From positions 1,054,001-1,118,000 of the forward strand of contig NW_026781909.1 in NCBI RefSeq assembly GCF_031769215.1: a DNA stretch of 64,000 nucleotides, written 5' to 3'. Position 1 is the first letter of the stretch. Each line of letters opens with the position of its first letter. Source of the stretch: Ylistrum balloti (lineage: Eukaryota). The translations under genes were made by a program, and so were the position numbers. The notes beneath the pieces were generated by a model. The model saw only the letters and a program-made list of their open reading frames with translations. It was not told where the DNA came from and ran no database searches. Positions 5,974-40,278 of this stretch are shown in pieces.

Positions 5974-8900
5974 TCAAACGGTGAGATTTAAGCCCATTGT
6001 CGTTGTAGTCTGGTTACCACTTGCTTCGTGTGGCGTCGAATTTCCAGTGAAGAATGCGATGAACTCTACAATGTAAGACATGCTAGAACAGTAATTATTT
6101 TCCCGAGTATTCGTCAGAGAAAAAGGATTGATATAACTTAAAACACAACTTCATTTATTAAGAATATTCAGAGGAATATTTGTTACGTTCAAATGATGTT
6201 TCTAAGATTAAATTCCATGTATGCGTGCTTACCATTTAAATCGATTAACCCATCACTATTTTTGTCCGCTGTTTTTATCAATTCGTTTACTTCCTCCTCT
6301 GTCATTGGTTCACCGAGATGCTTCAAGGCGATCCGCAATTCTTTAGGATCAAGAAATCCATTTCCGTCTCTATCAAACGTTTTAAAAGCCCAGATCAACT
6401 CTGCGATTTCGTCAGTGGTCTCTTTTCTATTTTTCATCAACGTAACAAATTCCGGAAATTCTAGACTCCCATTTCCTGTAAATAGTTAGGTAATGGCATT
6501 GTGAGTTGTGATTACACCATAAAAGTCGCGTGAACAGACAACATTTTGAACTTTGACATGAATGTTTTTCCTCAATAAGAATTTATTTTTTGAACGAACA
6601 TCATTGCACGATGATATGATGATATGAAACTTTCATAAAACTTTTAAATACAGTGGATTGCCAGATTTTTAACGGAAGCGGTACATAGCGTCACTTTGGC
6701 GTCATTGACGACGCCATGTTAATAAAATAGATCCAAGAATAAATAATGATATTGAAGTGCTTACTTACCATGTGCAAATACCTGTATAGCATTACATCTA
6801 GATATCTTACATGTCTCTTAATACTTACATTTATATAAAACTATGGATGTACCAGAAAGACAAGATGTAGAAAACATCGAGCATTTACAAGCGGTAAAAA
6901 GTAATGAAAAAGCCGTATCTAATTACAAGCGCAATCGTCATGCGGCGTAAACGCACATTGATTAATAGCCACAAATCACCTAACGGAGCTATACCTAAAT
7001 TGTGAACCACTACAAGTTGACTTTCCGGAAAAAAGGAGTAGATGCATTAAGGGTCAATTTTGGCCCCAGCATAGATTTTCTTAATTTTTATATCATGCAA
7101 ACATGGACATATGACATTGATAAAAAAACAAGTTTTCAATAATTCTGACAATGCGTTGCCTAGCAACGGGCCTGGAAACCAACCTACTCTTTACCGTCTA
7201 TTTGCACATTTTAGTGATATTTCACTGTTTTTTTTTATTATTTGGTGAAAATATTTAATCAATTTTTACATATCAATGGTATGATTTAAAAATCATATCA
7301 TATTTGTGATCAACCATCATATATTACATGTTTAAGATTTCCTAGCAACACAATAGCAACCAAACTCTCTCCATAGCAACGGATTGTAATAAATACAATA
7401 ATGGACACAGAAAATTGATGATAATACTCAAGGGCTGTTTAGATTATGATACATCTTAAAAATGTAAATATGATGATACAATAGAGCATATAGGTGGTAT
7501 TCCACAGTAACCATGTCTTACCATAGCAACTAAATATTTCACCATAGCAACAGTACATGCAATAATCAGTACATCAATTTGTCAATACTTCCGTACACGG
7601 TTATCTTTATATTCTTGGTTAATTTGAAAAGGATATGAAATCAAACATGTTACAGTTAATGATTCTTACAAAAGTTAAAAGTTATTTCAAATAAACATTA
7701 TGCACTAACAAAATACATTGTCATTCGAGATTAAAGCCAATTCCTCAGTCGATCAAGTGACCATCGTGCATTTGTAATTACATTTTTGGAGATTCCGAAA
7801 TTTATATGTAATTTACATGGCTACATCGGTAAAGCTGTGCTGTTTTATTCCTCCGTGTTACCTTCATCATCACTCTCATCAATACTGATTGGGTCTGGTG
7901 TATAACTGGCATCTTGTAAATATTGTGTCCAGTCCTTACTAAAGTCAAAGGACTTGTCTAAATGACGTGCAAATCCCATATACCATAAGATGGATGCAAC
8001 ATGGGAGCAAGTCCCAACCACCCTCGCCCCAGCACGGCATGTACAGTACCATCCTTGCACATTACAATCATCAAATGATACCCACAATTGGTAAAGTTTT
8101 GAGGAAAAATGTCGGCTCTGTATCTTGGCATTGATCAGATTAGCATCTACTTTACAGATAGATACTTCATATCCTCCCGTTTCGCTCATATGTTCCTGTG
8201 TGTAGGACCGTGCCAGTTTGAGCTGATACACTCCCAGTGTCAAATTCCGCAGGTCTTCTTCTGTCAGAACAGGAAATATGATATCAGTTGTGGTCTCCAT
8301 CTTCTGCCACTTACTAGGTCGATTGAAAAGGCCTTCTCGTTCAATTCTCTCCCAAAGAGAATTCTGCTTCCGTGACAAATGCAACATTTTCGATCCTAGC
8401 AGTTGATCTTGCTCTGCATCCCCCGTGCTTATTGGTGTACCGAACTTGTTGAAGATTGCACACACAATCCTGACAATATCGCCTATGTATGGAATCTGTG
8501 AGTTTGGCAACACACGATCCAAATATTTCCAGGTTTTTAACCGTCCATTCACAGCCTCAACGACCCATCTGAAAAATAGTAAATAGATGCATTTTGAATG
8601 TGAATAAATGCAGTATTCAAATGCATATGATGGTAACTATATCAAATAAATTTTGTTTTCAATTTCGACATCTTCTAAATGGACAGGTTTATGCAGTTCA
8701 ACTTATAAAATCGAAAGTATCTAATTCTCACTGGGAATTACCTTTAACCATTTTAATGATATATTAATACAAATAAGTTATAAATATGTTGTAAAAGCAA
8801 TTGGTAAAGTTAGTAAAATGTTACTCAGAACAAAGAGAGACCTTACCTTATTTTAGTAACAAGCCTGGAAGCGTTGCTTTCTCCGGTAGTGTGCTGTTTC

Positions 8901-11900
8901 CTTTGCTTGGAAAAAGAAGGCATCTCTGTTTGTATTCCTAGCTGTTGTAGGAGGTCCATGGAATCTCTAAAGCCTCTGTCAACCACAAACACATCATTTT
9001 CCTGAATCCACTCCTTGATTTCTTGAATGTTGGAATTTAAAATCTGATTCAGGATGCTGGCATCATTGTTTTTGGAATCGGCAAAATAGGGACCTAACAC
9101 GGACACTATGTAACCTGTTGTGGTGACAAACATCATAGGTTTTACCAACGGCCGGTGCTTATGCATGCTGTAACTCCTCCTTTGGAACATAAATTGGCCA
9201 CTCTTTTGTATATAAATGTAGGTGCCATCAATTACAAGAATGGCTGGTTCCATAAGTCCTCCAAACAATGTTTGGGCGAGTGGTCTTGTGTGTTTCAGTA
9301 TAACATCTTGTCGACTTACATGCTGAAATCCCAGATTTGATGGAACAAAGTCTTTCGCTAGTGCAACTCTTGCCGATGTTACTGCACGTCGAATAGAATC
9401 TTTTCCAATGTTAAAAACTGTTGATAGGACTTTATTTGACATGCCACTTTTTAGTTTAGTAAGAAAGATGCCGACACAAGATTTAATGCTCCTATTCTTT
9501 GAAGATCGCACAGAACCAGCACAGTGAGTACACAAATCGTTAAAATGCTGTGTACATAGTCCAGTTAGTGTAATGAAATCTTCATTCGAAAGGGCATGCG
9601 GTGAGTCAAAGTCAATGCGTTTGCTTTGCTGTGTATTTGCTACATCTCTAATCTTAGAAATCAATGCCACTATTTCAGTACGATTAAGAGAAGATAGGTC
9701 ACTTTTTATAGCAATGTTTTCACAAGCATCATTTTGCAATAGACCATCCTCGATATGATGACTACAACATCTTGCTCCGAACGGAACTAAAACCCCTTTT
9801 TGCAGGAAGAGGTCGTATTTCGCGTCACGAGATATTACCACCAGTTTCTTTGGGTAAGTATTGCATACAAAACATTTTTTGTGGCTACTTCCAGTGGATG
9901 GGATTGAAAGTGTAATATTCCGCGGCGATGAAAGGATGTTCTTTGTTGATTTATTACAAGGGGCTTCAACTGAAGAGTGGTGTTGAGCGATGTGTGTACG
10001 ACGCTGTAGTATTGAGCGATGACATGACATACGACACTTTCCACAAATGACATCTTCTTCTTTTGTTTGTATCATATATGTTTTCAACAAATATTTTCTT
10101 AGTGAAGAGTTTTCCTTGCCTTTAGTGAAGCGCCTGTCCCCAGGTTTTGTTCTCTTAGAACAAACAACACACCGAAATTCTCCCTTTCCAGGCATCCTAA
10201 ACAAATAGATACTAACTATATTAAAATATGTCCCAAACATCAGAAACTAAAGGGCGTCTGGGCATTTACTTATTGTATGTTGAATAAATATGAAACATTG
10301 TATCCATCACTTGTTGTTTATACAGTGTATCATGCAATACTGATCTTCATAATGTTATTACAATGATTTATCAAACATGTAAATTGATGTGTTAACAGGG
10401 ACCCGAGTCAGATATGAGCATTGCTTTGACTAGGTGTTAAATATTTGTATTACTTTACTAGAAGTCAATAATTGCTTTATTATACAGTATATACTGTATG
10501 AAATAATAAAATAATAGCTATTTTAGAAGCTGGTAGCTGGACTCATATGAAGTAATCGAAAATGTTTATCATTGTTCTTCATAAATAGCCAACAAGGAAA
10601 GACTGGACAAACAATTGGAGGGAGACAGACAGTGACAATTACATTAAACACATGTATAATAGAAAAAAAACCTGTTTTTATTACAATACATATATCAGTC
10701 ACCTTTTTTAAAATAAAATATTGTAGTTGAAACGGAAATAAACATGATAATGAGAGAATTCTCCTCCAAGTATTTCAGATTTCTGTTACTTAACAATTTG
10801 AAGCATAGAAATAAGATTAATTCAGGAACTTCCTAAAACACTTACATGTAACTTCAAGAATCTCCAGGCATTTTCTCGCTACTCTCTGTCTCCTATTACA
10901 TCACTAGTAAACCTTAAAGAATGAAAATAATGAAAATAAATAATCTATTAAATCTTAAGTTCGGTGAAAAATCTGATTTTTACAAAACTTTATTTTAAAG
11001 AGTAGCTAATGTATATTATGCCAGTGTCAATCTGTTTTAAAAAAATATATATCAAGCCAGTGTTTCGTATGTTTCCCGTAATTTGTTTTTGGTAACAGTA
11101 CATGTAGCATTGATACTGGCTATACAGTATATCTGGAGCATATAAACACGTTTATATATACATGTAAGCATGTACATGTATATACTTCATTTAGTTATTC
11201 AGGGATGTGCCATTATAACAAGAGTTCTCCGAAATATACAAGCCAATAAACTAACTGCAGCCAAAAATGAAGCTAGGTCAAAAATATCAAATAGCCACAA
11301 TATAATAATGTTCGATTCATTGTGCTGACGAAACTTACAAAGCAGAAGACTTACGTTTAATTTCTGAATCAAATGTATCCATAAAAATATTTGAATTCAG
11401 GTCCTCAGGATCGTTATGTTACTGGGATTCTTCAAAAGAAAATATACATGGTAAGATTTTTCATCGTATTAATTTTACAATAGTATAAATGAGAGAAATT
11501 ATACCCTAGCCCATAAGAATTAACACTTTAGTTTCTGCACGTATATGCTGATTATTTGATGCTAGCAAAAGTAAGTCCGACGCAAAAAATATATATAGAA
11601 AAAAAACTACCCTAGGTCGATAACAATTCAGCAAAATGACATCTAACGCGATGTAAGAGTTTCAATATATCCAAAAGAAATATTTGTAACACCAAGACTA
11701 TCGATGCAGATATAATTGTTTGTATTAGAATGCAAGGATATTTATATGGAAAAATACATGTAGCAACATGATATAACGTCCTGAAAATATTCTAATATTT
11801 ATAATTATTAATTCTATCAGTACATTATTGATGAATATAACTATTAAAATCGAGAATAATTGAGGTGAAAGTTATAGAAAAAAAATAAGAATAAAAAATA

Positions 11901-14900
11901 ATATGGTGTGTGCCCGCGATTTGAACTCGCCACGGCAAAACTACACCTCCAGAGCATCGCACCTTCACCATTACACTACAGCGGCTGATTACGTCACAGA
12001 GGAGATTTTGTTAGTAATATAAATCAAAACCAACACACTTCGGATGTACACTGATTTTATTATGGGTGTGTGAATTGACACTTTAGTTTATATCTCGTAT
12101 ATAGGAACACTTTCTCATTTTTATATGTTAGTGTATGTTTTGAAAACAACACTGTAGCAAATACAGTTTTGCCATTATGTTTTTTCTGACGATAAATCCC
12201 TGCATTTTGTTTGGTTGCAAAATTCTATTTTTAGACGCAGACTCAGACAACGTTATTATGGAAAATACCGTTTACAAACAAAAAAAGAAAAGGTTTTATT
12301 TTATTTTTTATACTTGTTATTGTATTTTTACTTACTGCATACTTATCAAAACACTAGCAATATCTACAATGACTATTTTTTCGAAGTCAGATCTGACGTC
12401 TGCTCATATGCACAAACGTAAACAAATCGCGACAATGTCGCGAATACACAACATGGATATCTTCTACATAATATTGTTACATACCTGTTAAAGAAGTAGA
12501 CAACTTCTACAAGATGTGCAGATGTGTTGACAGCTCTTCTACGTATACATACTTCAAATGTAGGCTGAAACTTGCAAGATCTTCTGTACGAGTTTAGACT
12601 AACGTACAATGTAGCGCATTAGACTCGGGCCTAGGAGATTGCAAAATCTAGGAGTTGTTACCATGGATATTTTTGTCATTTTTCAAAATACATTTTTTTT
12701 CATTATTATTATCTAATTTTATTAACAAACATAAGTCAAGTCATTTTTCATGTTTTTGTCTTTTATTTCAGCATCCATTTACTTCCGCAATCTTGTAGTC
12801 GGTCTCGACGCTAACGTTACGCTGGGCAACGTCAAAATCTCACCAAAATCGTGAAATGTGGTTACAAATTCAGAAGATATTTGTTATTTTAAATACCTCC
12901 CCAGGCATGTACCAAAAAAATATTTGAGCATCGCAAACATAATGTGGAAATTGTTCTCATTGATAAATATAAAATTGGTACACCCTTGGGGAGGTAGTTA
13001 ATTTTTCGTTCAAAGTCATAAAATATCGAAAAAAATCGTGACTTTTTGTAAACGTGACGTTTTCCCGCGAAATTTGTGACGTCATCACACGCGTTATGAA
13101 CCTATTTTTATCTGCATTTCAACTGATAAGTTGTTAAATAACACAAATGGGTACATGATTAAAGAATTTTCTAACAATTAAAAAAAAGATTTTTTGAGGC
13201 CAATTTTGAGCCAAAGTGCATCTACTCCTTTGTAAAAATGGTGTATAGCAACCATGAGGACAGAGGGGCGGGGCTCTGATGGGTGAAAAGGTATAGGCAA
13301 GGACAGGGGAACGAATTTTGTAAAAATGGTGTATAGCAACCATGAGGGCAGTGAGGCGGGACAAATGGCATACATCTATATTCATTTAAAGTGTGCTATT
13401 CCTTTGTCATTTTGGATTAAATTATGCTACTTTTGGCATATTCAAGGATTTTTCTTTCTGATTAGATTTTAGTCAAAGCTAAATATCAAGAAAACAGTGA
13501 TTACTAACTCCAATGAGATAATTATGATCTTATAACGAAATTGCTATCATGTTAAAAATGGATTGTTTTCGTGTACGAACAAACTAACTGACACGTTAAA
13601 ATGTTATCAGTTAAGCGTCTCAACGCAACGAGACATTTACCACGCCAATTGTCACTAACGAGATCACTAACGCATTTTAATGGAAATTTGTTTATATATT
13701 TCCATACCGAAATGATATTGATAAGTGTTATACAAGTGCATTTCAAATCATTCACGTGTGCTTGAAGACTGTTGAAATCATCCAATATTAGATATGAAAT
13801 TTATTGGATTGTGGAGAAGTACAACACGCCATTTATATTATGACATTCATTTAGAACAGTTTGGATTTTCCTGTGTCGTCTTTAGGTTTCAATAATTTAA
13901 CAATCATAACTATAAGTAAGAAAAGAATGAGATGATTGGTGTAGGTACATTCATCATCTGTCGCTGTTGTATCTTAATAAATATTTTGAAGTTACTTATC
14001 ACTTTTGTACAATTTTTCATGTCTTTATATATCATGTAATAAATGAAACCTACATAATGATATATTTTCTATGTTTAAATGATAACTATACCTTCCAATT
14101 CTTGCTCCGCGTCCTCTGATTCCTGCACTTTTTGCTCCTACATAAACATAAAAACACGCATCAACATTTTTTTTTTCTAAACCTAATATTTGTTTAAACT
14201 ATCAATACCATGCCCAAACACAGTCAATGAAATCCTTTTCAGAGGTAGATTATTTTCTTTTGACCAGAAGATCTGTTTGAACTTTCGATACCAGGCCCAG
14301 ATTGTATACTGATAACGTTGTTAGTATCCTCGGGATTATTGCTACTTTTGAGTTTTAACCCCCGGTGAAATAGGTACATAATAATGTACTTTGGAAAAGA
14401 CGAATTAAGTAAAACATGATTTATTTGATGACTGATAAGATTCAAACTGTTGATAAAACCGTGAACGTTTGGATTAGGACCAAAGTCAGGACTTGTAGTA
14501 TTGGGTCGTCCTGATAGAGGTGAAGGTCAATACCGGAAAAACAAATCTTGGCTCAAACTCAAAAATAACGAGGACAAAGTATGAAAAAACATTGTTAAGT
14601 AATCACAACGTTAATGCCCAAAATTTCAATTTGTAATTGCTTATTTAATAAAAAGAAACGTATTTGAAAAAAAAGAAAGAAAAAAAAATTGTCTGGTTTA
14701 TATAATAAATATTTGGTTAATGTAAAATGTGAGTTTGTCAGGATCATATGATATTGGTATTAAGTTTACGTTATCAATATTGATGGTCTGGTCTATATAA
14801 TAAAAATATATATGTGTAAAGTATGTCAACAAATTCATCAAAAACATACCAACATGTGAACATAATCATAATCCAAATTCATATTCGATAAAACTAGGGC

Positions 14901-16294
14901 AAAATATAAACGAAAGAAACATGAACACTGAGATTCCTGAAAAGTGCAAGGGGAATAAGACAACCAATATGTTACAAAAGAATAAGCGTCCTCTGCTTTA
15001 TCGACAACACTCGTAATGTAAACCTTGGTCAATCCAAGTAAGCAAGGTCACGTTCTCAAATGAAAAGAACGAAAACAACAACGGAACCAACAAACACAAG
15101 CATCAAACACATCCAGCTTCAGAAACAGACTATGACGACCGTAACACTTCCGTTGTTTTCGTCAACCTGCTTGTTTTGAAACCCTGTGTTATGGTTAGAC
15201 CGTCAGTTGATGACATATTGCAATCATGGTAATAGGAACAGGCCCTTGTTTGTAGAATCAAATGCGACATGTAAACACCATAGGTTTAGGATACTGGTGT
15301 ATTGTTATCCAGAAATAGAAAATAAGCAACAGGGAAAGTAAATATGAATGCGTCCGTTTTATGTGATACGTTTTAATTTAATGCTATACATTTTTATGTG
15401 TCTGGTTTAAGAACAAGGAGAATTTTGCTATATTTTTGAGAGTTCAGGAGGAGAAATGTCGTTCGGTTTATCTCACTCAAATGATGTCATATCGGCAAAT
15501 GGTACCCTAGTTTATAACAAAGAAATATCTTGACTACTTCCAACTGCTGAACATGTCTAACCGCATGTGACATAATCTTGAATTACAATTCTTATATTTA
15601 GTTAGTATTGACTTTCATGTTTTCATGTTTACATCCCGATTTGGAAACCCAAATGTTCTAAAAGCCCCCACGAATTCTGGTGTATGTGTGTGTGTGTTTA
15701 TTTTTTTAATGATATAGAATATGCAGCTGTTTTGCCCATTTCATGATATAAAAGTAATTTTTGTGTATCCATTCATGTTACCAAGAACAGATAAGTAAAT
15801 ACTGCTTGTTTTAAAACAAATATATCGGTTATGAGCAAATGTTGACGATATCGACAAACAGATGTCTATATCTGTTTACAGTGATCATATTTTGATCGTT
15901 AACAATAGCGGCTTGTAGATATCTTGGATGACGCATTAGGCATATCATTTAAATTTTAATTGATCCGACAAATTATCTTGATTCTACTAGTGCACTTTCC
16001 CCTCCATCTGCAGTTCATACATCAATGCTGTAATAACATATTTCTAAAAACTTTAGGTATCACTTGATTTCAAACGAGTAGTGAAAGAAAAAACGTTTTC
16101 ATTTGATTAGAGTTTTTGTTGTTTCAATTAATAAACATTTACCAAGATGTTAATTGCATTGTTTACAAAAGCATACATAGAACGAAATTACCTCCCCTGC
16201 TACATCTACATAATATCCTTTGTAAACACAAGTTTGTAAACTTGATAATAATTTCATTTCACATTTTTATGTGAAAAAACTCTTTACTTACCAT
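5974..16294 (-). CDS. Calmodulin-like gene A (C-lobe intact, N-lobe missing or highly diverged, extended C-terminal tail)
   Basis: Exons: ATG 16294-16292 (ATG|GTAAGT); 14137-14092 (EQKVQESEDAEQELE, 46 nt, phase 0 to 1); 6475-6233 (243 nt, GNGSLEFPEF...DRDGNGFLDPKE...DKNSDGLIDLN); 6065-5974 (EFIAFFTGNSTPHEASGNQTTTTMGLNLTV*). The last two exons are firm. Linking the first two exons to this gene is inference, and no clear EF1 exon was found. Confidence 0.65.
7845..10195 (-). CDS. Transposase, 690 aa, DDE_Tnp_4-like catalytic domain plus C-terminal SWIM zinc finger
   Basis: Exon 10195-8847 (1349 nt, donor AG|GTAAGG) and exon 8568-7845 (724 nt, acceptor TTTTTCAG) join in frame as LVTKIR-WVVEAVNGRLK. 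Motifs IDGTY, VDRGF and VVE form the putative D-D-E triad. N-terminal CxxC/CCxxH clusters; C-terminal WYCTCRAGARVVGTCSH (CxC-x-CxH). No stops or frameshifts. Confidence 0.88.
11904..11985 (-). other. tRNA-like (Pol III A/B-box) sequence inside the transposon; not a functional tRNA
   Basis: Minus strand GCCGCTGTAGTGTAATGGTGAAGG...GGCGAGTTCAAATCGCGGGCACACACCA: A-box-like TAGTGTAATGG and B-box GTTCAAATC. Stems are degenerate. Confidence 0.45.
14860..15300 (-). repeat. Copy of a dispersed repeat family (3' end of the Penelope-like element)
   Basis: Shares cataatccaaattc..aaaactagggcaaaat, gcgtcctctgctttatcgacaacactcg..aaaccttggtcaatc and tatgacgacc blocks with 32640-34500. Related copies at about 17680(+), 24950-25260(-), 25980(+), 27270(+) and 30945(+). 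Confidence 0.65.
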
Positions 16295-18580: not shown

Positions 18581-20702
18581 CTAATCGTTAGCAAGGATCT
18601 TGGCAAATTCTGTAACAGAAAGTAAATGTCATTAGCTATCTGAGTCTTTGTATATGCAGGCAATAATTTATTGTAAAGTATAAAACTATTATACTAGTTC
18701 TATAGAGAAAATCCGACATTAATTTGTTAAAAAATATATTTTATGGTATATCTTTTTCTCTAAGTTCGATCTACAATGTATTGTCCCTGATTGCTGATTT
18801 TTTTCTAAATGTTATAGACTACTGTATACCATACTTACTTATATATTTATGTTTATCATGAACATTTTCTAAAAGTTTTATCGTATGATTATACTAACCA
18901 CCATATTTTATGTAGCCATCACCATCAGGATCAGCCTCTCTGATCAATGCATCCACCTCCTCGTCTGTCAATTTCTCCTCCAAGTTCACAAGAGCATGGC
19001 GAATTTCTGCTGCACTAATCAGACCATTGCTGTCTTTATCAAATGTCTTAAACGCGTTTAATATTTCCTCCTCCTCGTCATGCCCATCAGGAAGAAAGCG
19101 GATCATACATTCTAAAACATCCTGAAAATCTGCGGTGCCATGCCCTGAAAATGAATACATCTTGTCGTGCAGCAATTTATTTTTGTAGTTACAACTTTCC
19201 CAGTCAGGTGGGTAATATTTTTGAGTCTTCAGTGACAACAATATTACACTATTACACAGGTTTAATTAGTCAATGACAAAGTTTCATTCAACAATGCCGT
19301 AAAAGAAATCAGCTGCTCGACCTCCCAAATTTCCTTCCGCAGTAAGACCGCTCGTACGCTTCTGTCAGGGCCAACAATAGTAATAAATGTTGGCTGGTAT
19401 AACCTTTTTCACAATTATTGCAATTGTATCATAATATTCTCTTTATAGCCGGAGAATGAATAAAATTACATCATGCAGTTGTTTCATCCTTCTAAGAATC
19501 GATCTGATTTGTTAGAACGTGAACAAGGAAAGTTTAAAAAATGTCCGAAATAAACGCATAAATATAGGCAGCGTTATTTTAATCATATTTAGAGAGGTTT
19601 AGGTAAAAGAGTTCTATCGCTATTTAAAACAAGAACAAAGAATGATATTTTTGAAAGAAATTGACTTTTTAAACCATGCATGTTCATCGATTTATGCTAA
19701 TAATTTCAAAACGCTTTCTACACACTTTAAGGTACAGTCTCACAATAGTCAAGATACAAAGCGATAACGTGAAGTTTTAAGAAGGACACTGTGGAACAAT
19801 ACAAGGGAGATAATCACCTGTTGGATCCACGTCCTTCATCATCTCCTTGAGTTGGGCCTCTGTTGGAGCGGCGTTTAATGCCCTTATAATGGTAGCTATG
19901 TCTTTGGAAGCTATTGTACCATCTCCATCTTTGTCAAAGAGCTTAAATGTGTCTTTAAACTCTAAAATGAAAGCAAAATCCAATTTTGTATCGCTCTATA
20001 TTTCCTTTTTATTACATTTTGTATGATGATGTTTGTTTTCAATATTTAATATGATAATTCAAATGGAATATTTTTTTGCACTGTTATCATGTTCAAAATT
20101 ATTTGAAAACATATCAGTTTGAAAACAAAATTTCGTAACAATGTTGATTTAAGGGAAAATTTTTTTGTTAGTGTTTAAAGAATGAAATTTTAAAGTGTTA
20201 TTTTGATGTCAGTACAGAAATCATAGACATACCTGCTAGCTGGTTATCTGTCAACTGGCTCGCCTGCAATAAAAAATAAGGGTTTTTACATTTTTCATAC
20301 AATCACTAAAGTATGGTATGAATGGTATTCATATACAGCTTCTTGAAATTAAATGCAAAACATATACTTAATATACATAGATACAATAAACAGTTATGTA
20401 AAGTTTGCAAAAAGAATATAATATACATTTATTCGAGTGTCCATGAATATCAACTTCACGTACGAAAATTGATGTCAAACGAATCTTAATTCAAATAAAT
20501 ACATGTAATTCACAGTGTTACGATGAATTACATTTCCATGATAAAAATATGTGTTTGTTACATTATATATCAATCATTTACCTGAATTGTTTAAACTGAA
20601 GAACAAATTTATCATTTTGTAGGTTACTGAATAGATTTTCAATTTATCTCACAACTTTACGAATACTAATTAGCAGCATTAGCAACGCAAATTACTTGCC
20701 AT
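18581..20702 (-). CDS. Calmodulin-like gene B, 150 aa
   Basis: Exons: ATG 20702-20700 (ATG|GCAAGT, GC donor, tentative); 20263-20233 ([10 protein letters not shown]); 19961-19818 (144 nt, [21 protein letters not shown]...); 19144-18899 (246 nt); 18609-18581 (EFAKILAND*). All phases are compatible and all acceptors are AG. Confidence 0.88.
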
Positions 20703-22520: not shown

Positions 22521-23323
22521 ATATACACTTTCATAAGGATGGTGTAATCAATGTTTATTAAACTTATATACACTTTCATAAGGATGGTGTAATCAATGTT
22601 TATTAAACTTATATACACTTTCATAAGGATGGTGTAATCAATGTTTATTAAACTTATATACACTTTCATCAGGATGATGTCATCAATGTTTATTAAACTT
22701 ATATACACTTTCATCAGGATGATGTCATCAATGTTTATTAAAGTTACATACACTTTAATCAGGATAATGTCATCAATGTTTATTAAAGTTACATACACTT
22801 TAATCAGAATAATGTCATCAATGTTTATTAAACTTATATACACTTTCATCAGGATGATGTCATCAATGTTTATTAAACTTATATACACTTTCATCAGGAT
22901 GATGTCATCAATGTTTATCAACTTTATATACACTTTCATCAGGATGATGTCATCAATGTTTATTAAAGTTACATACACTTTAATCAGGATGATGTCATCA
23001 ATGTTTATTAAAGTTACATACACTTTCATCAGGATGATGTCATCAATGTTTATTAAAGTTACATACACTTTAATCAGAATAATGTCATCAATGTTTATTA
23101 ATCTTACAGACACTTTCATCAGGATGATGTCATCAATGTTTATTAATCTTACAGACACTTTCATCAGGATGATGTCATCAATGTTTATTAATCTTACAGA
23201 CACTTTCATCAGGATGATGTCATCAATGTTTATTAATCTTACATACACTTTAATCAGAATAATGTCATCAATGTTTATTAATCTTACAGACACTTTCATC
23301 AGGATGATGTCATTATTGTTTAT
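22521..23323. repeat. 45-bp tandem array, about 18 copies
   Basis: Unit tttcatcaggatgatgtcatcaatgtttattaaacttatatacac; period 45 (catcaatg at 22816 and 22861). It explains the 15-aa repeat ORFs on both strands. Confidence 0.95.
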
Positions 23324-23518: not shown

Positions 23519-25429
23519 TCAACTGTCTTTCCGACTCAGGAAGGTTTTTATAAACTCTGAAAAAAGATACAAAATCATAACATCATTCTGTTAAAAACTA
23601 ACATTATTGTTCACCAAAGATTTCACGTAAGGTAATTTTTATGTGTTTTTATAATGATACCAAAACGGATGTTTTGATCAAACTGGAGGAGAAAAAGAAA
23701 TAATCATTATTTACACTTAATCTAGAATGGCTATATTACCTTCGTAATTTATCAACCCTTTTCCGTCCACACGTGCATCTTGTAGGATGTCGTCTACTTC
23801 ATCAACTTCCAGCTTTTCTCCACAGTTCGATAGGATTCGTCGAAAATGCTCCTCTGATATCTTATCGTCGCCATCTTGGTCAATCATCTGGAATGCTGCC
23901 TTCATATCTTCAGCATGATTTACATTGGTTGGTATCAATTTTTTGAATGATGTAAACAAAGACAAAAACTCGGGAAACGTAATTCGTCCGGTTTCTGAAA
24001 GACCAAACAAAAATACAATGGCATGACAAATTTCAATAGAGAATTAGCTTTGGGTACAGTATAGCGTAATAAAACGTAAACCGTATCATAAATCTGTTCT
24101 ATTTTTTTAAAGTTTGGAGGTGACTGAAGAAAGGAAGAACAAAGTCTGACTGGGGAGTTGAAAAGAAAATATACCGTTATCATCCGATTCCTGTGCTGCC
24201 TGCTGCAGTTCCTTAATTTGAGCCTCGGAAGGGCAATGCCCAAGTGAACGCAATACTAATCCCATTTCCTCCATAGCTATAGACCCATCTCCATAGGAGT
24301 CCAGCAAAGCAAATGTTTCTTTCATACCTGTATAGAATGTTGTTAACATGATCAATAGGACAGCACAACAGAAATGATCATCTATATACGATATATTTCA
24401 CATGGTATGTTGTATATGGCTCCGATTTCTTTTTTATAAACCTATAATGATTCAAACCCATATACAGCAATACGGTATCCTCTTTATTTCTCATCTACGG
24501 AAAGAGCCGAGTGTTCCCGATTGTCTCTACAATTGAATTGTCTGGAACCTTTACTTATATTGTAATGGTGTACCGAATTAACATGTGTACACCTTTCCAT
24601 GCTGAATACCAATCAGATTTATGATTTTATGGATGGTATTTACTTACCGTCAATTTCATTCGCCTGTTGCTGTTTAGTCGTCTGAAAAAAGGAATACAAC
24701 ATTTCGGTATTTTCTTTATTTAACTAGCGATATACGAGTATTGAATATACTGGTTATCAGCGACATATTGTTTTACCATCCGTAATGCATACATTGCGTT
24801 TGCGTTTTGAGCAACAAATGTGAACAAATGTCCTGCTTGAGCTTTCAGATAAAGCTTAATTTGAACAGCTACATTTTCAATAAAGGCATTATGTGAAAGA
24901 GGCTCAATGTACGATATGAAAAATCTTTACATAGAAATCCTCGAAAAGGTAACAGAAGAGCAACAGCAAGTTTTCTTGAAGGGCAAACGTCTGACATCCG
25001 TCTGTAAATCTTAGTCGATTCTAAATTAACATGGTTGATCAGGCAGACTTTGGAGCATCAAACACACTTTCGTTGTTTTCTTCGTTGTCTTCATCACACG
25101 TTATAAGGAGAATATTACAAAATAAGACAACGACCATAAAATATCCCCATAGCCTTCATCAACTTGCATCTGTCAAAGCCCTGTGTAGTAAGTCTACGAA
25201 AATCGTAACATTGGGAACAAGCCTATGGATTTCGTTTCATTTGTAGACGACTTGCAGCTTAAGTAAACGGAAATAAATGGCTCAAGATGAAAGTAGAGTT
25301 ACAAGAAGGATAATTCTTCCTGAAAAAAAACATAAAACAACACACAGACATTCATCTACATTTTGTATCAACTATACCCTGTAATCTTTACGATGGTAAT
25401 GCATGTTAAGGTGATGTTATAATTACCAT
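23519..25429 (-). CDS. Calmodulin-like gene C, 160 aa, strongly diverged EF-hands
   Basis: Exons: ATG 25429-25427 (ATG|GTAATT, tentative); 24681-24648 (TTKQQQANEID); 24327-24175 (153 nt, GMKETFALLDSYGDGSIAMEE...); 23994-23740 (255 nt); 23556-23519 (EFIKTFLSRKDS*). In frame, with GT-AG introns at calmodulin positions. Confidence 0.85.
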
Positions 25430-27862: not shown

Positions 27863-30800
27863 TCACTGGTTTAACATCATTTGCTTGAATTCTGAAATTT
27901 AAACAGATAGTCGCCGTTTATTTCATTTTAAGGTATAAAGTGTTACTTAACTCCTCTCGTTTGAGTTGCCGTCTGGTTAATCGTAAAGGAATGTAATCGA
28001 TAAGAAATTGTTCATTTTTCCCGTTTTATACATACATATGAATTACATATATATATACACGTTACCATTGACTGTTTTCTTCGCTCTGACATCTTTGAGA
28101 ATTTATGTTTTCTCTTTTTATTGGTTTCAATGTATTTTTTTCTTCAACATGTTTTTAAAAAATATGCAAAATAAACATATCAATATTGCAATTTTCTTAA
28201 GAAAGAACAATTTTGTGAATATTGAAAAAGATGAAATACAAAAAAGTGTACTTGTATTAATTGTAGGTATTTCTCTCACCAATCCAATGAAAGGGAAATA
28301 AAAAAAATATTTAGCATGTTTCTGAAAAAATATCGGATAAAATTTCCAGCTTTTTCAGTAATGATTTCTGAAGGAAATGAAAAGCAATTGAATATGTTGT
28401 CATTCAGGACATGTGGTATTTACACAAACCTTCAAAATCTATCCTGTCGTCCTTGTTTATGTCAGCTTCATTCATCATAGCGTCTACCTCGGCATCTGTT
28501 AGTGACTCTCCTAGGGAGTTCATTACCTCCTTGAGCTCACTCTTTGAAATGCTGCCGTCACCATCCTTATCAAACACTTTGAATGCCTCAAATAAATCGT
28601 GATGTGGATCCGAAGATTGCATCTTTTTCATCATATTGAGGAATTCCGAAAATTCGATAGTACCATTTCCTGTATGATGATAATAAGTTAATAATAAGAT
28701 AGTCTTTATTAAACATTGTTTCAAATATATGAACCGAAAAACACCCAGACATGATTCTATTAGTATCCATGTACTTTCGTGCAAACCTTTGTATATCATC
28801 ATCATACATCTTTGGATAATACATTTGTTGGCATGTCAGCGTTTTCTGACTTAAATAAAACATCAATGAGTTTTTCAGCAATTAAAAACTGACAAAATGA
28901 AAGCTTCAGACGAATAGAACGTAATATAAGGTAACAGTTATATGTAATTCTGCAAAGATGAAATGAGGGGTCGAAAAGAAGAAAACCAACAACGCTTCCC
29001 TCATCCTCTCCCCTTCAAAATGGTCACATACTCATCTTAGCTTTTTACATGGTAGCGGCCTTGATTCGGAAAAAGATCTTGTTACTTGTGCATGTGACCT
29101 TCATTGTGTTAAACGTTCGTTTGTATACCTGCTGGTTTGTTTGACGCTACTCCAGCTCCCACTTTGATAGCATAGCAGTATTTAGATATGATGGCCTACT
29201 TGATGTTGGCTGTCGAAGAAGCAGATCATCATTACTTACATGGTCTCCTCGTTATTTTCATGGGTCTGTGTAAGTAGTTATACGTATTCCGTCATTTCGA
29301 TACAAAACAATATTTGTTTTATTTCAGACGTGTAAAGCAATGAAATTACCATCGGAATCTGCTTCATTTATCATGTCGCAAAGTTCCTGTTCTGTTGGTT
29401 TTTGCCCGAGGGATCTCATCACTGTCCCAAGTTCGTTTTCTGACACCCTTCCATCTTTATCTTTATCAAAAAGATTAAACGCCTCTTTGTACTCTGAAAA
29501 TAATACATGTATGTATTGCGTATGCATTGAAAAATGAAGCAAAGTAATATTTCCACCAAAGACCAAAATTTATCTACATATCTAGTGTATCTATATATGT
29601 AAACCAAGACCTTAGTTATCGGTATGAGTAAAGAGATGTGCTAAATGTTATTGCGAATACTCTTTTCAATCTCTGTTAACGAGTTCGTGTTATTTCATCT
29701 CAAAACTTGCACACCAAGATGATTCTGAAGAAGAAAAGATCTCTCCAGTGCCTATAATGATTTAAATTTTTTAACTTTGAAGAATTTGCGACCAAGGTCA
29801 GCAATATTACAGATTTATTAGAGAGTTCATCAAATTTTTCTATTTGTTTTTGTTTAACAAAGTATGTGCTTACAAAATATAGATGATGCTTAACAAAATT
29901 TGGTATGTCTGCACACACTTTAGCAATCGAATCTCATGTCATAAAAATATCAAGCAATAGGATATTGCACATTACATGATGATTCTAATTATTTCGACCA
30001 GCTTAAGACAAAACGTAATTCTACAGGCTTCAGCAGGGTTAAAACCAGTACTGGAACTTACCCTAACGATCGCATATTTTAAATCTTTTCTTCTTTGAAG
30101 GAATATTTCGGTAAAGATTGCTTCTATACAAGAGGTATTCTTAAGAGGTTAGCCGATCAAATAAATTTCATAAGCCTTGCATGATTGATAAGTTTTCTTT
30201 TTTGGCTTCAGACTAAAATGCGGGGAAAATGCGTAAAATGCATAAAAAATAGATAGAAATACATTTTGATATTAATAAATATCACTATGCAGACAGACAA
30301 AATGCGCTCATCAATGTCAGCTGTGCTTTGCTAGACATTTATGAAATTTTGCGATGCAAACTAATGATGGTAAAGCAAATAAACGCGAACAAAAATTATA
30401 ATGTTCTTATTTACCAAAATGATACAAAGGTAAATCCTCCCCTAGTCCCAAGTTAAATCCTTCAATTTGACTTTCAGGTATGTTGATGACTTATATAACA
30501 AGTGATTTATTGATGTTATATATACCCACCAGAACAGGAAATTAAGAACTCTTCTACAACAGCCACTTACCTCATTCTTTTCTGATAATGAATTCGAAAG
30601 GAACAGCTTTCTATCAAGCTGTATGATGAACATGCTGATTTCAATTTCCGTATTGTGAATTTTCCATTTCTGGACAGCAACACTCCTACATCTCTAATCT
30701 ATGGTGTGTAAACACCGCAGCTTATTCGACATTCATGGACTTATTTAGAGTATCACGACAGAAACACACAACACAATGTTGTGAGAGATGCAGTTTGATG

Positions 30801-31883
30801 GAGATTATGGGGAAGTGACCTAATTTGAAATGCATTCATTTTGCGATAGTTGAACGTGTTTGGTGATCATGAGTGTGCTGAATGCACCTAGCTCTCATTT
30901 GAGAACATGTCATTACTTATTTGATTGACCATAATTTACAATACGGGTGTCGTCGATGAAGTAGCAGACGCTTATCGCTCCAGAACTTCTGGTCTTACTG
31001 TCTTTGTACTTATTTAGAAGTATCCGCATAACTTTTGCTCTTGTTTTCCTCATAGTTTCATTGACCTTGTGTTTGAACTAATATTTTATTTTAATTTTAT
31101 TTTACTATTTTATTTTTGTTGTTTTGTTGTTTTTATTGCTGTTTCCCTTCCTCTTTACCGTATTACGCAACATATTTGAATTAATGACAAGTAGACATAT
31201 ATTTAAGTACAACATCAAAAACCTATCTGTAAGCCTGTAATACACACATGTACGATTCTGTTGACATGTTGGTTTTTCTTACATCATATAGAATGCATTT
31301 GTGATTCCAATGATTCCAAATTTAATCAAGTGTACGTGATTAGTGCTCATCATATACAACCCGTATGACAACATAATGTATAACATATTTATGTTAAACA
31401 ATTCCTTGACAGTTATAATGATATTGAATAATATATATGAATCCTATCTTACCTGCAATTTCACTTTCTGAAAGATCTTCCTGGATATAAGAAAAGAAAA
31501 CATGATGTAGAAGAGGATAACATATGAATGCCTATATGCATCAGATTTGTTTCTATTATGTATAAATTTTTTGATCGAATTATCAAAAGGGTCATTTTAC
31601 CTAACGCTAACTCAACATTAAATTTCACACAGGATGAGAGATGTTTGCTGCAATTTCAAGAACAAGCCAATACAATCATATAATACGACGGAATATATCC
31701 CCAAGATATAATCAGCAGTTATACGACTGTAAACATTGGTCGTATGTTGATCAGGTGCACGTCCTTAAGAAATTGTAATCCGTACCATAATTTTCATTCT
31801 TATGCGATAAAAATTAATTCAAATCAATATGCATGCGAATCACGACCGAACGTGCTTATAAACACAAAATAAACACTTACCAT
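27863..31883 (-). CDS. Calmodulin-like gene D, 147 aa, four near-canonical EF-hands
   Basis: Exons: ATG 31883-31881 (ATG|GTAAGT); 31480-31453 (EDLSESEIA); 29493-29350 (144 nt, [37 protein letters not shown]...); 28669-28430 (240 nt); 27891-27863 (EFKQMMLNQ*). Confidence 0.92.
30540..31070 (+). pseudogene. Decayed Penelope-like RT C-terminal fragment plus 3' terminal repeat
   Basis: Translates [38 protein letters not shown] (about 30612-30730). It is followed by cgggtgtcgtcgatgaagtagcagacgcttatcgctccagaacttctggtct, the dispersed terminal motif. Confidence 0.7.
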
Positions 31884-36703: not shown

Positions 36704-39700
36704 TCACATGTTTACGGTAAGTATATGGGTTGCAAATTCTGAAAAAATCAATTTGAATACTATATCAAGTTTTATTCGTTTAATGCATTTGAAACTTGAG
36801 AATAAGTTTATACTAAAATAGGATACATACGATGTGAAGCAAAATCTTACCTCGAGACAATAATTATTTACTATATACGTTAAAGGTTAGAAATTTTGAT
36901 TGAAGTCATTATCTAGGCACGTGAAATCCAGATGATATGAGTGGAGTACGTGGTATCTAATGGGGCAATGAATATTGGGTCTATAAGTACAATATAGGTA
37001 AATAAGTAAGTATGATTCAAGAAAATAGGTATAAGTTATGAGATCAAGAGAGTCAACGAAATTAGGTTAATAAATGTATAGTAAGTACAAGGTAAGTATA
37101 AAAATAACTCCCATGTAGATATAGAGAAAATAAGAGTTTACTGAGAAGTAAAGAACATCTATTGTCAAAGGATAAATACTATTATATTAAATAATATCGC
37201 AGAAACACGTGCATCAGAACCACTCCGACATCAAAACATGGTTAAAAATATAATCAAATCCAACATGTACTAAAAAGAACGTATTTTTGTTGTGCAATAT
37301 ATTTTTTTCAAGTTTAATTGTAGCTTTACCTTCAAATGCAATTTGACCGGACCCTGTTTTGTCCGCTTCCTTAATCATTTCCTCTACTTCCTCGTCGGTC
37401 AGTTTCTCTCCGAGATTAATCATCGCCTGTTTGAGATCTGCTGTAGGTATCAACCCATTTCCGTCCTTATCGAACACTCTGAATGCTTCCCGAAGGTCTT
37501 CCGGGGTGTCCTTTTCCTTCATAGATTTCAGCATCAATGTGAGAAATTCTGGGAAATCTACCAGACCGCCGCCTGCTAATAAATCATAATGGAATAGATT
37601 AACTATTAATTACGTCACTAGAAATATTAATGTGGCCTTTGAAGTCGTCGGACGTCATCCAGTGGAGTCGGTTACCCTCTTGGTTACCATACTCAACCCT
37701 CAACTCTTCTAAATGAGATCGCTCTCTTAGACTTGCATTTCACTTTCGGTCAAAGGCCAAGGTCGCTGGTAATATAGATGGAATAAAGTCTGTTAAAAAA
37801 ATTGCATAAGCCAACCGAATTCACATGCATTTTCCTTAGTGTGTGTGATCAGTATGTACCTACTGTCGGAGAATCGAAAGTCGATGTAATTCTTACTACA
37901 TGTTTTTGTTTCTACAACTAATGCAAAACCTTAACAAAATTCGTAATCATATATTGTTTCCTCAACAGGTCAAAGGTTAGGACTTAAGGTCAATGTCACT
38001 AATTCCTTCAATGTAAAAATTGTACATTTAGTTTGCTTGTCTCTGTTAAAATAACAAATCAAACATTACGTCCTATTTTGAGTGGTTGCTTTTCAAGTGG
38101 GAAAGCCATAATTGCTGATAAAAATGCTTCCCGTGAACTCGAGTGAAGTTTGTATGCTTTATTGTCTTACTGGTTTTGTTTTTCGAACCCGGCCTGTTCG
38201 ATGTATCGTTGACACGATATGATAAACCTTTTAATTGATTTACTATATTAAATATCTGGGGATAAACCCGACATGTTTAAATCTTCTGTCTGATATTCTA
38301 TTTTGTTGTGATCATCCAATGATTTTGACCCGCTATCCACTCTTGTCCATTTTACTTCATATACAAACATGTTTATTTGTGCTCTAGTTACACCCATCAT
38401 GAACTGTACAGGATAGCAACTTTACTGATTAACTTTTGATCTTGTTCATTATCAAATTACCGTTTCTACTTCATGACTACCTGTTACAGTGCAGCTCCAT
38501 TCATTGTCCCTGATGTTGTTGGTACCTAATGCTATTCGTGCAAGTTATTGGTGTTTGTTTAACACCCTGATGTTATATAGTCGTGACCCGATGTGTTTCC
38601 TGTCGCTCCAGACCTTGTAAAACGTTATACCTAACGTGATTGTAAAGTCATCGTGTGTTGTGTTTCATATGAGATACTATGGAAGCCTTGTATATTCTAT
38701 GGAAGCCTTGTGTATTCTGTGGAAGCCTTGTGTATTATATGGAAGCTTTGTGCATTCTGTGGAAGCCTTGTGTATTGACGTTGTTGTGGACTCTTCATCA
38801 TTGTGGGTTGTGGCAAGGAAGTTTTTGCATGCATCTCGATCGTTATGAAAGAGTGTTTTTGACTCGTAGCGTTTTTGCTGACTTTATGAGTTGTAGTAGT
38901 TTGTTATTTTATCAACAGAAGACAAATAAAATACCTTTATCCTCGTTCTCCAGTTCATCTATCCTTTCTTGTAGCTCTCGTTCTGAAGGATTCTGACCTA
39001 ATGACCTCATTACCATGCCAACCTCCTTAGTGGAGATAGCTCCGTCGCCATCTTTGTCGAACAAACTGAAGGCTTCTTTCATCTCTGTTAAGTAAAATCA
39101 TAAATAATGATCACATTAATTCCATGTAATGTTTAATCCAGTGATACATTCAGCTGAATTATACTTAGAAAATAAAAAGGTTTATAACATTCTACAGAGA
39201 CAGACTTCTTTCGTGACTAGGTATTGCTCAATTAAACAGGTCACGAACATATTCCTTAACTTAGCTTAATTACCATAAGAAAGTGTAGTTACACATATTA
39301 CCTCATTACACCACATACTGTTAATATGTTGATAAAACAATGCTTAATGTACGAGAATAAGTAGTTACATAGTCTAAGCCATCTTCCTGGTGGCGGCTGA
39401 AACTTGTTAAGCCAGTATGGTGTAATGTTAGCTTGCTTTGCTCAAAATATGTCTTATTTATATTATTGTTCTTAATTATGTATCATATAAGCACTTCATG
39501 TTTGTCGTTCTGTTCAGGGGCATGCCAAAATGTTACCACCATATTGTTTTAGTAGTCTATGTTCTCCATTTTTAGAAAAAAAGTGAATTCGAAGAATGGA
39601 CCAGATTTTGTTATTATAGTCCATGTGTTTATTCTAAATATATACGTAGGACAACATTGTTATTTTCATGTAGATATCAGCAATAACACTGTTTAGAATC

Positions 39701-40278
39701 TTAATCTTACCTGCAATCTGATCTTCTGTCAGTTCGTCCGCCTGTAATTTGATATAAATATACTTGTAAGTGGACTATAGAGTGTTAAAACGATTTTTGC
39801 TATTTCTCATTCGATGACATTAGACCTATCATGACAACTGTCATTTTCTAATCTGGAGATGAATTACACAATATATTGTTATACTGATAATGATGTCTAA
39901 TATTTGAATAGATCTACGCCTCCTGTATTTTATTTTTAATTTGAAGATGAAATGATAATGAAATAGATAACAAATTTTGATGTTAAAAGCGTCCTTACGA
40001 AGGTCTATTCTGGTGACATTCTTTTCTGAAATTCAACACATTTTTGTGTTGTTTTTATGATATATACTCGAACGATCGTGCTGTGTGTGTTTCAACCAGA
40101 TTTCAGATAAGTTCCCCCTCCATTCAAGCAATCTCAATGTTCAGAAAGCTCAAATTAAAGCAGACACTGATCTTTAAAAATGAAATAAGATACTTTTTTT
40201 TATGTTAAATTCTCGTTATTTCTGTTATAAGTAGAATTTTCCAACATTAAAATGAGGATTAGAAACTATACTTACCAT
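36704..40278 (-). CDS. Calmodulin-like gene E, 153 aa
   Basis: Exons: ATG 40278-40276 (ATG|GTAAGT); 39741-39711 ([10 protein letters not shown]); 39084-38935 (150 nt, [37 protein letters not shown]...); 37572-37330 (243 nt); 36738-36704 ([11 protein letters not shown]). Confidence 0.92.
38679..38776. repeat. 20-bp minisatellite, 5 copies, in intron 3 of CaM-like E
   Basis: ggaagccttgtgtattctgt at 38681, 38701, 38721, 38741 and 38761. Confidence 0.9.

What the first reader, a model, noticed from the sequence alone, without database searches (positions are those of the whole stretch)
5974..40278. Tandem array of five non-canonical calmodulin-like genes sharing calmodulin exon architecture
Five same-strand paralogues (A-E) span 34 kb. 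They keep the ATG-only first exon and the phase-1 introns of animal calmodulin: B, D and E have exons near 31/144/243/29 nt, where 243 equals the fused vertebrate 107+136 exons. Animal calmodulin is normally almost invariant, yet these proteins differ heavily from it and from each other, with indels in loops and linker (exon 3 of 144-153 nt, exon 4 of 240-255 nt) and distinct termini. Intact frames and splice sites despite this divergence suggest an old, selected expansion of specialised Ca2+ sensors or adaptors. Molluscan CaM-like proteins have been linked to shell formation, and the adjacent CFAP107 raises a ciliary or sperm role. Both functions are inference. This is the best candidate in the window for an under-described system.
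Basis: partly seen in the sequence, partly recalled or inferred. Interest (0 to 1): 0.72.

Follow-up and report, generated by a model that had tools for sequence, protein, structure and literature searches.

The report
Conserved scallop calmodulin-like gene array
This is a real tandem row of divergent calmodulin-like calcium-sensor genes that scallops have kept in the same order next to CFAP107 under purifying selection, but it is one small part of a very large calmodulin-like family, it is already machine-annotated in other scallops, and one of the five copies has lost its front half.

Summary
All the genes lie on the minus strand. Four (B to E) are complete: an ATG-only exon 1, phase-1 introns, canonical splice sites and two EF-hand lobes. 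They are 42-66% identical to calmodulin and 34-53% to each other.

Gene A is not complete. Its N-lobe exon 3 is missing from the window and from the whole assembly, and a 6.2-kb DDE transposon sits inside the gene. A sixth member (Z) lies 14 kb outside the window.

The genome is Ylistrum balloti or a very close relative. Mizuhopecten yessoensis has the same order, CFAP107-E-D-C-B-A, with matching exon lengths. Argopecten and Pecten share CFAP107-E-D.

Each gene pairs one-to-one with its orthologue (SH-aLRT 97-100). dN/dS is 0.03-0.25, with dS saturated. So "old and selected" is supported.

"Under-described system" is only weakly supported. The orthologues carry automatic RefSeq names, no paper found treats them, and this genome holds at least 87 calmodulin-type exon-4 matches. 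The scan has also noted a similar five-gene cluster elsewhere in this genome (s1-240702).

The parts
36704..40278 (-). Gene E, 153 aa. Exons: 40278-40276 (ATG only), 39741-39711 (31 nt), 39084-38935 (150), 37572-37330 (243; a tandem acceptor at 37575 is also possible), 36738-36704 (35 nt including the stop).
   Evidence: About 88-91% identical to the orthologues P0006 (Argopecten), P0121 (Pecten) and P0373 (Mizuhopecten). 66% identical to calmodulin.
27863..31883 (-). Gene D, 147 aa. Candidate ATG exon at 31883-31881, then exons 31480-31453 (28 nt), 29493-29350 (144), 28669-28430 (240), 27891-27863 (29).
   Evidence: Orthologous exons in Argopecten (L033), Pecten (L034) and Mizuhopecten (L048) are 65-77% identical. 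All four loops have canonical ligands at positions 1, 3, 5 and 12, and all nine calmodulin methionine positions are kept.
23519..24681 (-). Gene C, 160 aa. Exons: 24681-24648 (34 nt), 24327-24175 (153), 23994-23740 (255), 23556-23519 (38). The ATG exon is unresolved (candidates at 24779 and 25429).
   Evidence: The orthologue is P0244, neo-calmodulin-like of Mizuhopecten, 158 aa, 67-69% identical with the same N- and C-termini. 42% identical to calmodulin. Three or four EF loops are non-canonical.
18581..20263 (-). Gene B, 150 aa. Exons: 20263-20233 (31 nt), 19961-19818 (144), 19144-18899 (246), 18609-18581 (29). Candidate ATG exon at 21570.
   Evidence: 90% identical to the orthologue P0372 (OWF37199, Mizuhopecten), which also fixes the 246-nt exon 4.
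5974..6475 (-). Gene A, C-terminal half only. Exon 4 is 6475-6233 (243 nt, two canonical EF loops). Exon 5 is 6065-5974 (92 nt) and encodes a long Thr-rich tail ending -NLTV.
   Evidence: The Mizuhopecten orthologue (182 aa, L048:48699-53437) is 66% identical in exon 4 and has a matching tail.
14092..16294 (-). Probable 5' end of gene A. ATG|GTAAGT at 16294-16292, with about 90 nt of flanking similarity to the Mizuhopecten A exon-1 region. Candidate acidic 31-nt exon 2 at 14122-14092. Exon 3 is absent.
   Evidence: 70% identity over 90 nt, E 2.6e-4. Absence of exon 3. The exon 2 call is an inference.
7032..13231 (.). A 6.2-kb DNA transposon inside gene A, 557 bp upstream of exon 4. It has 56-nt terminal inverted repeats and a DDE_Tnp_4 transposase ORF at 8846-10246 (minus strand).
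42331..43307 (+). CFAP107 coding exons, head to head with gene E.
   Evidence: PF22595, E 2e-37 and 8e-11. The same neighbour in the same orientation occurs in Argopecten, Pecten and Mizuhopecten.

Best explanation
The locus is a conserved scallop (Pectinidae) tandem array of calmodulin-family paralogues. They arose by DNA-level duplication of a calmodulin-type gene before the Ylistrum, Mizuhopecten, Argopecten and Pecten lineages split. Since then each has been kept as a separate gene under purifying selection.

The products are small cytosolic two-lobe EF-hand proteins. They most likely act as calmodulin does, by clamping helical target motifs, but each has its own calcium dependence and target surface (inferred from sequence):
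- D keeps canonical ligands in all four loops and all nine calmodulin methionine positions, so it is probably a full Ca2+ sensor.
- E keeps site 1 and has altered sites 2-4.
- B keeps sites 3 and 4 and has swapped most methionines for aliphatic residues.
- C has lost key ligands in three or four loops and all the methionines, so it probably binds partners largely independently of Ca2+.
- A-type proteins carry two canonical C-lobe sites and a conserved Thr-rich tail.

In this genome gene A has lost its N-lobe exon and carries a transposon. It is either a recently damaged gene or makes a one-lobe product. Skipping exon 3 keeps the reading frame, because its introns are phase 1 on both sides.
For: Family:
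- EF-hand Pfam hits on every exon.
- Calmodulin is the top solved relative even for the most divergent member.

Gene plan:
- Canonical AG/GT sites and phase-1 introns.
- Exon lengths equal or within 3 nt of those in Mizuhopecten: 150/150, 144/144, 153/153, 255/255, 246/246, 243/243, and 243 vs 240 for E4 and 240 vs 243 for D4.

Synteny:
- CFAP107-E-D-C-B-A in Mizuhopecten.
- CFAP107-E-D in Argopecten and Pecten.

Orthology:
- Each window gene pairs with its orthologue with SH-aLRT 97-100. Stems are long and tips short.

Selection (window vs Mizuhopecten, NG86 and YN00 where available):
- E 0.05/0.08
- D 0.08/0.20
- C 0.12
- B 0.03/0.08
- A exon 4: 0.12
- Against Argopecten and Pecten, E gives 0.05-0.09 and D 0.14-0.25.

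Paralogue-specific loop and methionine changes are shared by orthologues.

Gene A:
- Exon 3 is present in Mizuhopecten but absent here.
- The transposon's inverted repeats are confirmed.
Against: - There is no RNA evidence for this species. Support for the models comes from conserved splice sites and from annotated orthologues.
- dS is saturated (0.6-2.4), so the dN/dS values are approximate.
- Calcium binding and target binding are inferred from residues only.
- Deep branching among paralogues is unresolved. Monophyly of the array is neither shown nor rejected (p-AU 0.44), so local duplication is inferred from position and not demonstrated.
- The missing exon 3 of A could in principle be an assembly or haplotype artefact.
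Confidence: 0.85

Rival explanations
1. The copies are decaying duplicates, that is neutral pseudogenes whose open frames survive by chance.
For: Gene A lacks its N-lobe exon and holds a transposon. In this species C has lost more Ca2+ ligands than its Mizuhopecten orthologue, with Arg at position 1 and Lys at position 5 of EF4.
Against: All exons are open with canonical splice sites. One-to-one orthologues survive at saturated dS with dN/dS 0.03-0.25. Each orthologue pair shares its own deviations. Only A is a candidate pseudogene, and its remaining exons still give a ratio of 0.12.
Confidence: 0.05
2. The array encodes shell-formation calmodulin-like proteins of the pearl-oyster CaLP kind, which act in mantle calcium handling and biomineralisation.
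For: Bivalve calmodulin-like proteins have been linked to calcification, and CaLP has an extra C-terminal tail (citations in PMC13144384, and in PMC5040781). Expansion of the Calmodulin-A-like family in giant clams was interpreted in the same way (PMC11700175). A-type members here have a conserved extra tail.
Against: I have no expression data. The N-termini are calmodulin-like and start directly with the acidic first helix, with no hydrophobic leader. I did not have the CaLP sequence, so orthology with it could not be tested. The argument fits any of the dozens of other calmodulin-like copies in this genome equally well.
Confidence: 0.1
3. The array, or at least gene E, is functionally tied to CFAP107 and acts in cilia or sperm flagella as an axonemal calcium sensor.
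For: E and CFAP107 lie head to head in four scallop genera, 2-7 kb apart. Calmodulins solved within axonemal complexes are among the close solved relatives (e.g. 7jts).
Against: Linkage alone is weak evidence. The spacing is too large and too variable for an obvious shared promoter. Nothing in the protein sequences is cilium-specific, and there are no expression data.
Confidence: 0.1

Closest known systems
Canonical animal calmodulin, present in this genome at C101:1847307 (locus L003)
   Same: Length is about 150 aa, with two EF-hand pairs. The gene plan is the same: ATG-only exon 1, a 31-nt exon 2, a 144-nt exon 3, an unsplit ~243-nt exon 4 and a 29-nt last coding exon, all internal introns phase 1. 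It is the best solved relative.
   Different: Identity is only 42-66%. There are indels in the EF2 loop and the central linker. Several loops lack canonical ligands, most target-binding methionines are lost in B and C, and the C-termini differ.
Bivalve calmodulin-like proteins (Pinctada fucata CaLP, Crassostrea gigas CaLPs) and the Calmodulin-A-like expansions reported in bivalve genomes
   Same: These are divergent calmodulin paralogues in bivalves, some with an extra C-terminal tail, and the family is expanded (PMC5040781, PMC11700175, PMC13144384).
   Different: No orthology to any characterised member was shown. The CFAP107-linked E-D-C-B-A-Z array is not described in any paper I could find.
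Automatically annotated scallop orthologues: XP_069115256.1 (Argopecten), XP_033764296.1 (Pecten), OWF37196, OWF37198/XP_021339245.1 and OWF37199 (Mizuhopecten)
   Same: They are one-to-one orthologues of E, C and B, 67-91% identical, with the same gene order and exon lengths.
   Different: The names are automatic (calmodulin-alpha-like, neo-calmodulin-like, Calmodulin, Sulfhydryl light chain). One RefSeq model fuses E+D+C+B into a 561-aa protein named calcium-dependent protein kinase 31-like. In those species gene A is two-lobed, but here it is truncated.
Plant CML and vertebrate CALML families
   Same: These are lineage-specific radiations of calmodulin-like sensors with graded loss of EF-hand function and new target specificities (PMC5983762, listed; the rest is general knowledge).
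   Different: They are independent radiations. Many plant CMLs are intronless, whereas these genes keep the animal calmodulin intron plan.

Membership tests
Calmodulin-like proteins (calmodulin family sensu lato) | About 150 aa made only of four EF-hand motifs in two lobes, with no other domain | tested here: met
   B, C, D and E are 147-160 aa, with EF-hand_7 pair hits on both the exon 3 and exon 4 products. Gene A of this genome does not meet this, because only the C-lobe is present.
Calmodulin-like proteins (calmodulin family sensu lato) | Closer to calmodulin than to other EF-hand families such as troponin C, myosin light chains or centrin | tested here: met
   The top 60 solved relatives are all calmodulin, both for exon 4 of E and for the full-length C orthologue P0244 (E 1e-35 to 1e-43).
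Calmodulin-like proteins (calmodulin family sensu lato) | Calmodulin gene plan: ATG-only exon 1 and phase-1 introns at homologous positions | tested here: met
   The canonical gene of this genome has the same unsplit exon 4.
Bona fide calmodulin | Near-invariant sequence, roughly 90% or more identical to canonical calmodulin | tested here: not met
   E 66%, D 59%, B 52% and C 42% identity to the near-canonical reference P0008.
Bona fide calmodulin | Four canonical Ca2+-binding loops (Asp at position 1, Asp/Asn/Ser at 3 and 5, Glu at 12) | tested here: inconclusive
   By sequence, D has 4 of 4. E has 1 clearly canonical loop; EF2 has an insertion, EF3 has Asp at position 12 and EF4 has Thr at position 3. 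B has 2 and C has 0 or 1. A has 2 of its 2. Actual binding was not measured.
Pinctada CaLP-type shell calmodulin-like protein | Orthology to CaLP, the extra C-terminal tail and mantle expression | not tested
   I had no CaLP sequence and no expression data. Only the A-type tail resembles the description.
Functional (expressed, spliced) genes | Spliced transcripts across the predicted junctions in this species | not testable with these tools

The most novel reading that the evidence does not exclude
The array is a scallop-specific graded toolkit of calmodulin-derived adaptors, fixed early in Pectinidae. It would run from a full four-site Ca2+ sensor (D), through partial sensors (E, B), to an essentially Ca2+-insensitive member (C). 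It would also include an A/Z type whose conserved Thr-rich tail ending -NLTV docks the sensor to PDZ scaffolds. Each would serve a dedicated partner, for example IQ-motif motors or channels in adductor muscle, mantle eyes or cilia. Loss of the N-lobe of A in Ylistrum would then be a natural one-lobe variant.
Probability: 0.12. Interest if true: 0.5.

Novelty: new member of a known kind. Interest (0 to 1): 0.3.

Why it matters
The locus gives a clean, dated example of how an almost invariant hub protein diversifies after tandem duplication. There are six linked paralogues, each with its own pattern of lost Ca2+ ligands and lost target-binding methionines, and each pattern is frozen across scallop genera.

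It would be useful for correcting RefSeq models that fuse neighbouring genes, and as a starting set for biochemical comparison of calmodulin-like sensors in bivalves.

It does not reveal a new kind of system. Calmodulin-like expansions in bivalves are already reported, and this genome holds dozens of further copies.

Tried and rejected

2. Looking for the N-lobe of A. I used tblastn with all paralogous exon 3 peptides, an HMM over every open segment of 15 aa or more, low-stringency tblastn and blastn, the Mizuhopecten A exon 3 as query, and a whole-assembly search. All were negative.

3. An ATGGTAAGT at 6771 looked like an exon 1 for A. I rejected it because it lies in a dispersed ~150-bp repeat and cannot splice in frame to exon 4.

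4. The word-index protein search with A exon 4 found nothing. With D exon 4 it returned only generic calmodulins. The orthologues were reached through E and through the exhaustive representative search with C.

5. Exact look-ups of P0244 and P0242 for contigs failed. The fused model P0371 gave the Mizuhopecten locus instead.

6. The ESM Atlas look-up of the B orthologue gave only generic calmodulin clusters.

7. Exon-4-only and exon 3+4 trees do not resolve the relations among paralogues.

8. The identity of DNAJC16 downstream was not verified. Pfam found nothing on the exon-sized ORFs I tested.

9. Joined spliced models were built only inside scripts, for translation, alignment, identity and dN/dS. 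They were never sent to a search tool. Searches used single exons by reference or database protein ids.


Full report
**What is there.** An EF-hand loop scan and tblastn with the window's own exons place every calmodulin-type exon on the minus strand. Searching for AG...GT intervals in phase 1 gives one clean model per exon. Models, in window coordinates:
- E: 40278-40276 (ATG only, then GTAAGT), 39741-39711, 39084-38935, 37572-37330, 36738-36704. Product 153 aa.
- D: 31480-31453, 29493-29350, 28669-28430, 27891-27863, with a likely ATG exon at 31883. Product 147 aa.
- C: 24681-24648, 24327-24175, 23994-23740, 23556-23519. Product 160 aa.
- B: 20263-20233, 19961-19818, 19144-18899, 18609-18581. 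Product 150 aa.

For B the better donor (GTTAGT at 18899) gives a 246-nt exon 4. It restores Glu at position 12 of EF-hand 4 and matches the Mizuhopecten protein. Every exon 3 and exon 4 product hits the Pfam EF-hand models. The closest solved proteins are calmodulins. Identity to a near-canonical calmodulin is 66% (E), 59% (D), 52% (B) and 42% (C). Identity among the paralogues is 34-53%.

**Gene A is not complete.** A has an intact exon 4 (6475-6233) and a 92-nt exon 5 (6065-5974), but no N-lobe. The following were all negative in the window and in the whole assembly:
- tblastn with every paralogous exon 3;
- an HMM over all open segments;
- low-stringency protein and DNA searches;
- the exon 3 of the Mizuhopecten A orthologue as query.

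A 6.2-kb element lies 557 bp upstream of exon 4, where exon 3 is expected. It has 56-nt terminal inverted repeats at 7032-7087 and 13176-13231 and a DDE_Tnp_4 ORF. The likely 5' end of A is still recognisable. There is an ATG|GTAAGT at 16294 in a 90-nt stretch that is 70% identical to the Mizuhopecten A exon-1 region, and a candidate acidic 31-nt exon 2 at 14122-14092. Because exon 3 is flanked by phase-1 introns, joining exon 2 to exon 4 would stay in frame. Whether that happens is unknown. A second ATGGTAAGT at 6771 lies in a dispersed repeat, and I rejected it.

**Context in the genome.** The window is C52:1054001-1118000 of a 648.5-Mb assembly. Exon 4 of E finds at least 87 matches at E <= 1e-6, and most of them align over the full exon length with no stop. 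About 46 lie on contig C101 between 1.85 and 2.52 Mb. These include the canonical calmodulin exon 4 (L003) and several near-identical copies. A sixth member of the C52 array, Z, lies 14 kb before the window start and has both lobes. For A, B, C and E, where I ran the search, the nearest relatives in the genome are the canonical-type copies, not their own neighbours. The scan has also noted a five-gene calmodulin-like cluster on another piece of this genome (s1-240702). The shared calmodulin exon plan is therefore a family trait here, not a peculiarity of this array.

**Species and orthologues.** A 532-aa RefSeq protein of Ylistrum balloti (XP_060072888.1) contains three exon-4 peptides that are letter-for-letter those of contig C354. 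So the genome is that species or a very close relative (Pectinidae).
- E exon 4 is 89% identical to calmodulin-alpha-like of Argopecten irradians. The Pecten maximus protein falls in the same 90% cluster.
- In both genomes the gene lies head to head with CFAP107 and is followed by the D orthologue.
- The exhaustive representative search with C exon 4 found the Mizuhopecten yessoensis protein OWF37198/XP_021339245.1. Its cluster also held OWF37196 (E), OWF37199 (B) and a 561-aa RefSeq model that fuses E+D+C+B.
- The Mizuhopecten locus (L048) reads CFAP107, E, D, C, B, and then a 182-aa gene that is the A orthologue. That gene has an intact exon 3 and a C-terminal tail like that of window A.
- Exon lengths agree between the two species, exactly or within 3 nt, and all sites are AG/GT.
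- CFAP107 is confirmed in the window at 42331-43307 on the plus strand.

**Selection and history.** For exons 3+4 against Mizuhopecten, dN/dS (NG86, and YN00 where it ran) is:
- E: 0.05 / 0.08
- D: 0.08 / 0.20
- C: 0.12
- B: 0.03 / 0.08
- A, exon 4 only: 0.12

dS is 0.6-2.4, that is saturated. Against Argopecten and Pecten, E gives 0.05-0.09 and D 0.14-0.25. In a maximum-likelihood tree of exon 3+4 peptides, every window gene joins its orthologue with SH-aLRT 97-100. A and Z are sisters (97). The stems leading to each orthologue group are long (0.25-0.82) compared with the tips. Deeper relations are unresolved, and a single origin of the array is not rejected (p-AU 0.44). The picture is early divergence after duplication followed by long constraint.

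**What the proteins look like.** Aligning the models with their orthologues shows that each paralogue's departures from calmodulin are shared across species.
- D keeps canonical ligands at positions 1, 3, 5 and 12 in all four loops, and methionine at all nine calmodulin positions examined.
- E has a canonical loop 1, a loop 2 with an insertion and non-ligand residues, Asp instead of Glu at position 12 of loop 3, and an invariant DKTGSG-type loop 4.
- B has Asp at position 12 of loop 1, a degenerate loop 2 (Thr, His), canonical loops 3 and 4, and aliphatic residues at six of the nine methionine positions.
- C has a non-acidic residue at position 12 of loop 3 in both species. In this genome it also has Tyr at position 3 of loop 1, and Arg and Lys at positions 1 and 5 of loop 4. 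It has no methionine at any of the nine positions.
- None has an N-terminal hydrophobic leader.

From this I infer a graded series, from a full Ca2+ sensor to a largely Ca2+-independent binder, each with a changed target surface. No binding was measured.

**What is known.** Papers on bivalve calmodulin-like proteins deal with single genes from pearl oyster and Pacific oyster, or report family expansion in general terms (PMC5040781, PMC11700175, PMC13144384). I found no paper on this array or on any of the orthologue accessions. The array is therefore annotated but uncharacterised: a new member of a known kind.

**Limits.**
- Joined spliced models were used only inside scripts. Searches used single exons by reference, or database proteins.
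- I could not test for the array outside Pectinidae, nor test orthology with Pinctada CaLP.
- The DNAJC16 neighbour was not verified.

Noticed in passing
G000 contig C101, about 1,845,000-2,518,000 (loci L002-L027 and others): A very large cluster of calmodulin-type genes: about 46 exon matches, roughly 38 genes, in 0.67 Mb. It includes the canonical calmodulin exon 4 (L003) and several near-identical copies. Smaller clusters lie on C328, C354, C444, C331 and C994.
   Followed up: partly
window 5974-6065; L048:53334-53437: A-type members have a conserved long Thr-rich C-terminal tail that ends -NLTV in both Ylistrum and Mizuhopecten. This fits the class I PDZ-ligand pattern, but that reading is inference only.
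   Followed up: partly
L048:10001-45796 (Mizuhopecten); L033:15276 onward (Argopecten); contig C354 of this genome: Public gene models fuse neighbouring calmodulin-like genes. XP_021339258.1 (561 aa, 'calcium-dependent protein kinase 31-like') is E+D+C+B. A 302-aa Argopecten model starts with D and runs off the fetched locus, so it probably merges D with its neighbour. XP_060072888.1 (532 aa, 'LPS1-alpha-like') merges the C354 cluster.
   Followed up: partly
L031:5888-6625 (= C52:1039888-1040625, 14 kb before the window start): A sixth array member, Z, on the minus strand with both lobes. It is sister to A in the tree (SH-aLRT 97).
   Followed up: partly
window 3732-4562, 22523-23326, 32829-34329, 48259-50098, 52999-54358, 56396-57330: Several minisatellites with units of 23-56 bp and up to 42 copies lie between and beside the genes. 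The 56-bp array at 32.8-34.3 kb explains the strong GC and AT skew in that stretch.
   Followed up: no
window 583 (minus strand): Another exact ATGGTAAGT, the motif that marks the ATG-only first exons of E, D and probably A. It might be the first exon of Z or of another gene, or it might be chance.
   Followed up: no
window 6659-6858 and 13778-13900: Short dispersed repeats (about 100-190 bp, 70-82% identical copies on many contigs) flank the transposon inside gene A.
   Followed up: partly
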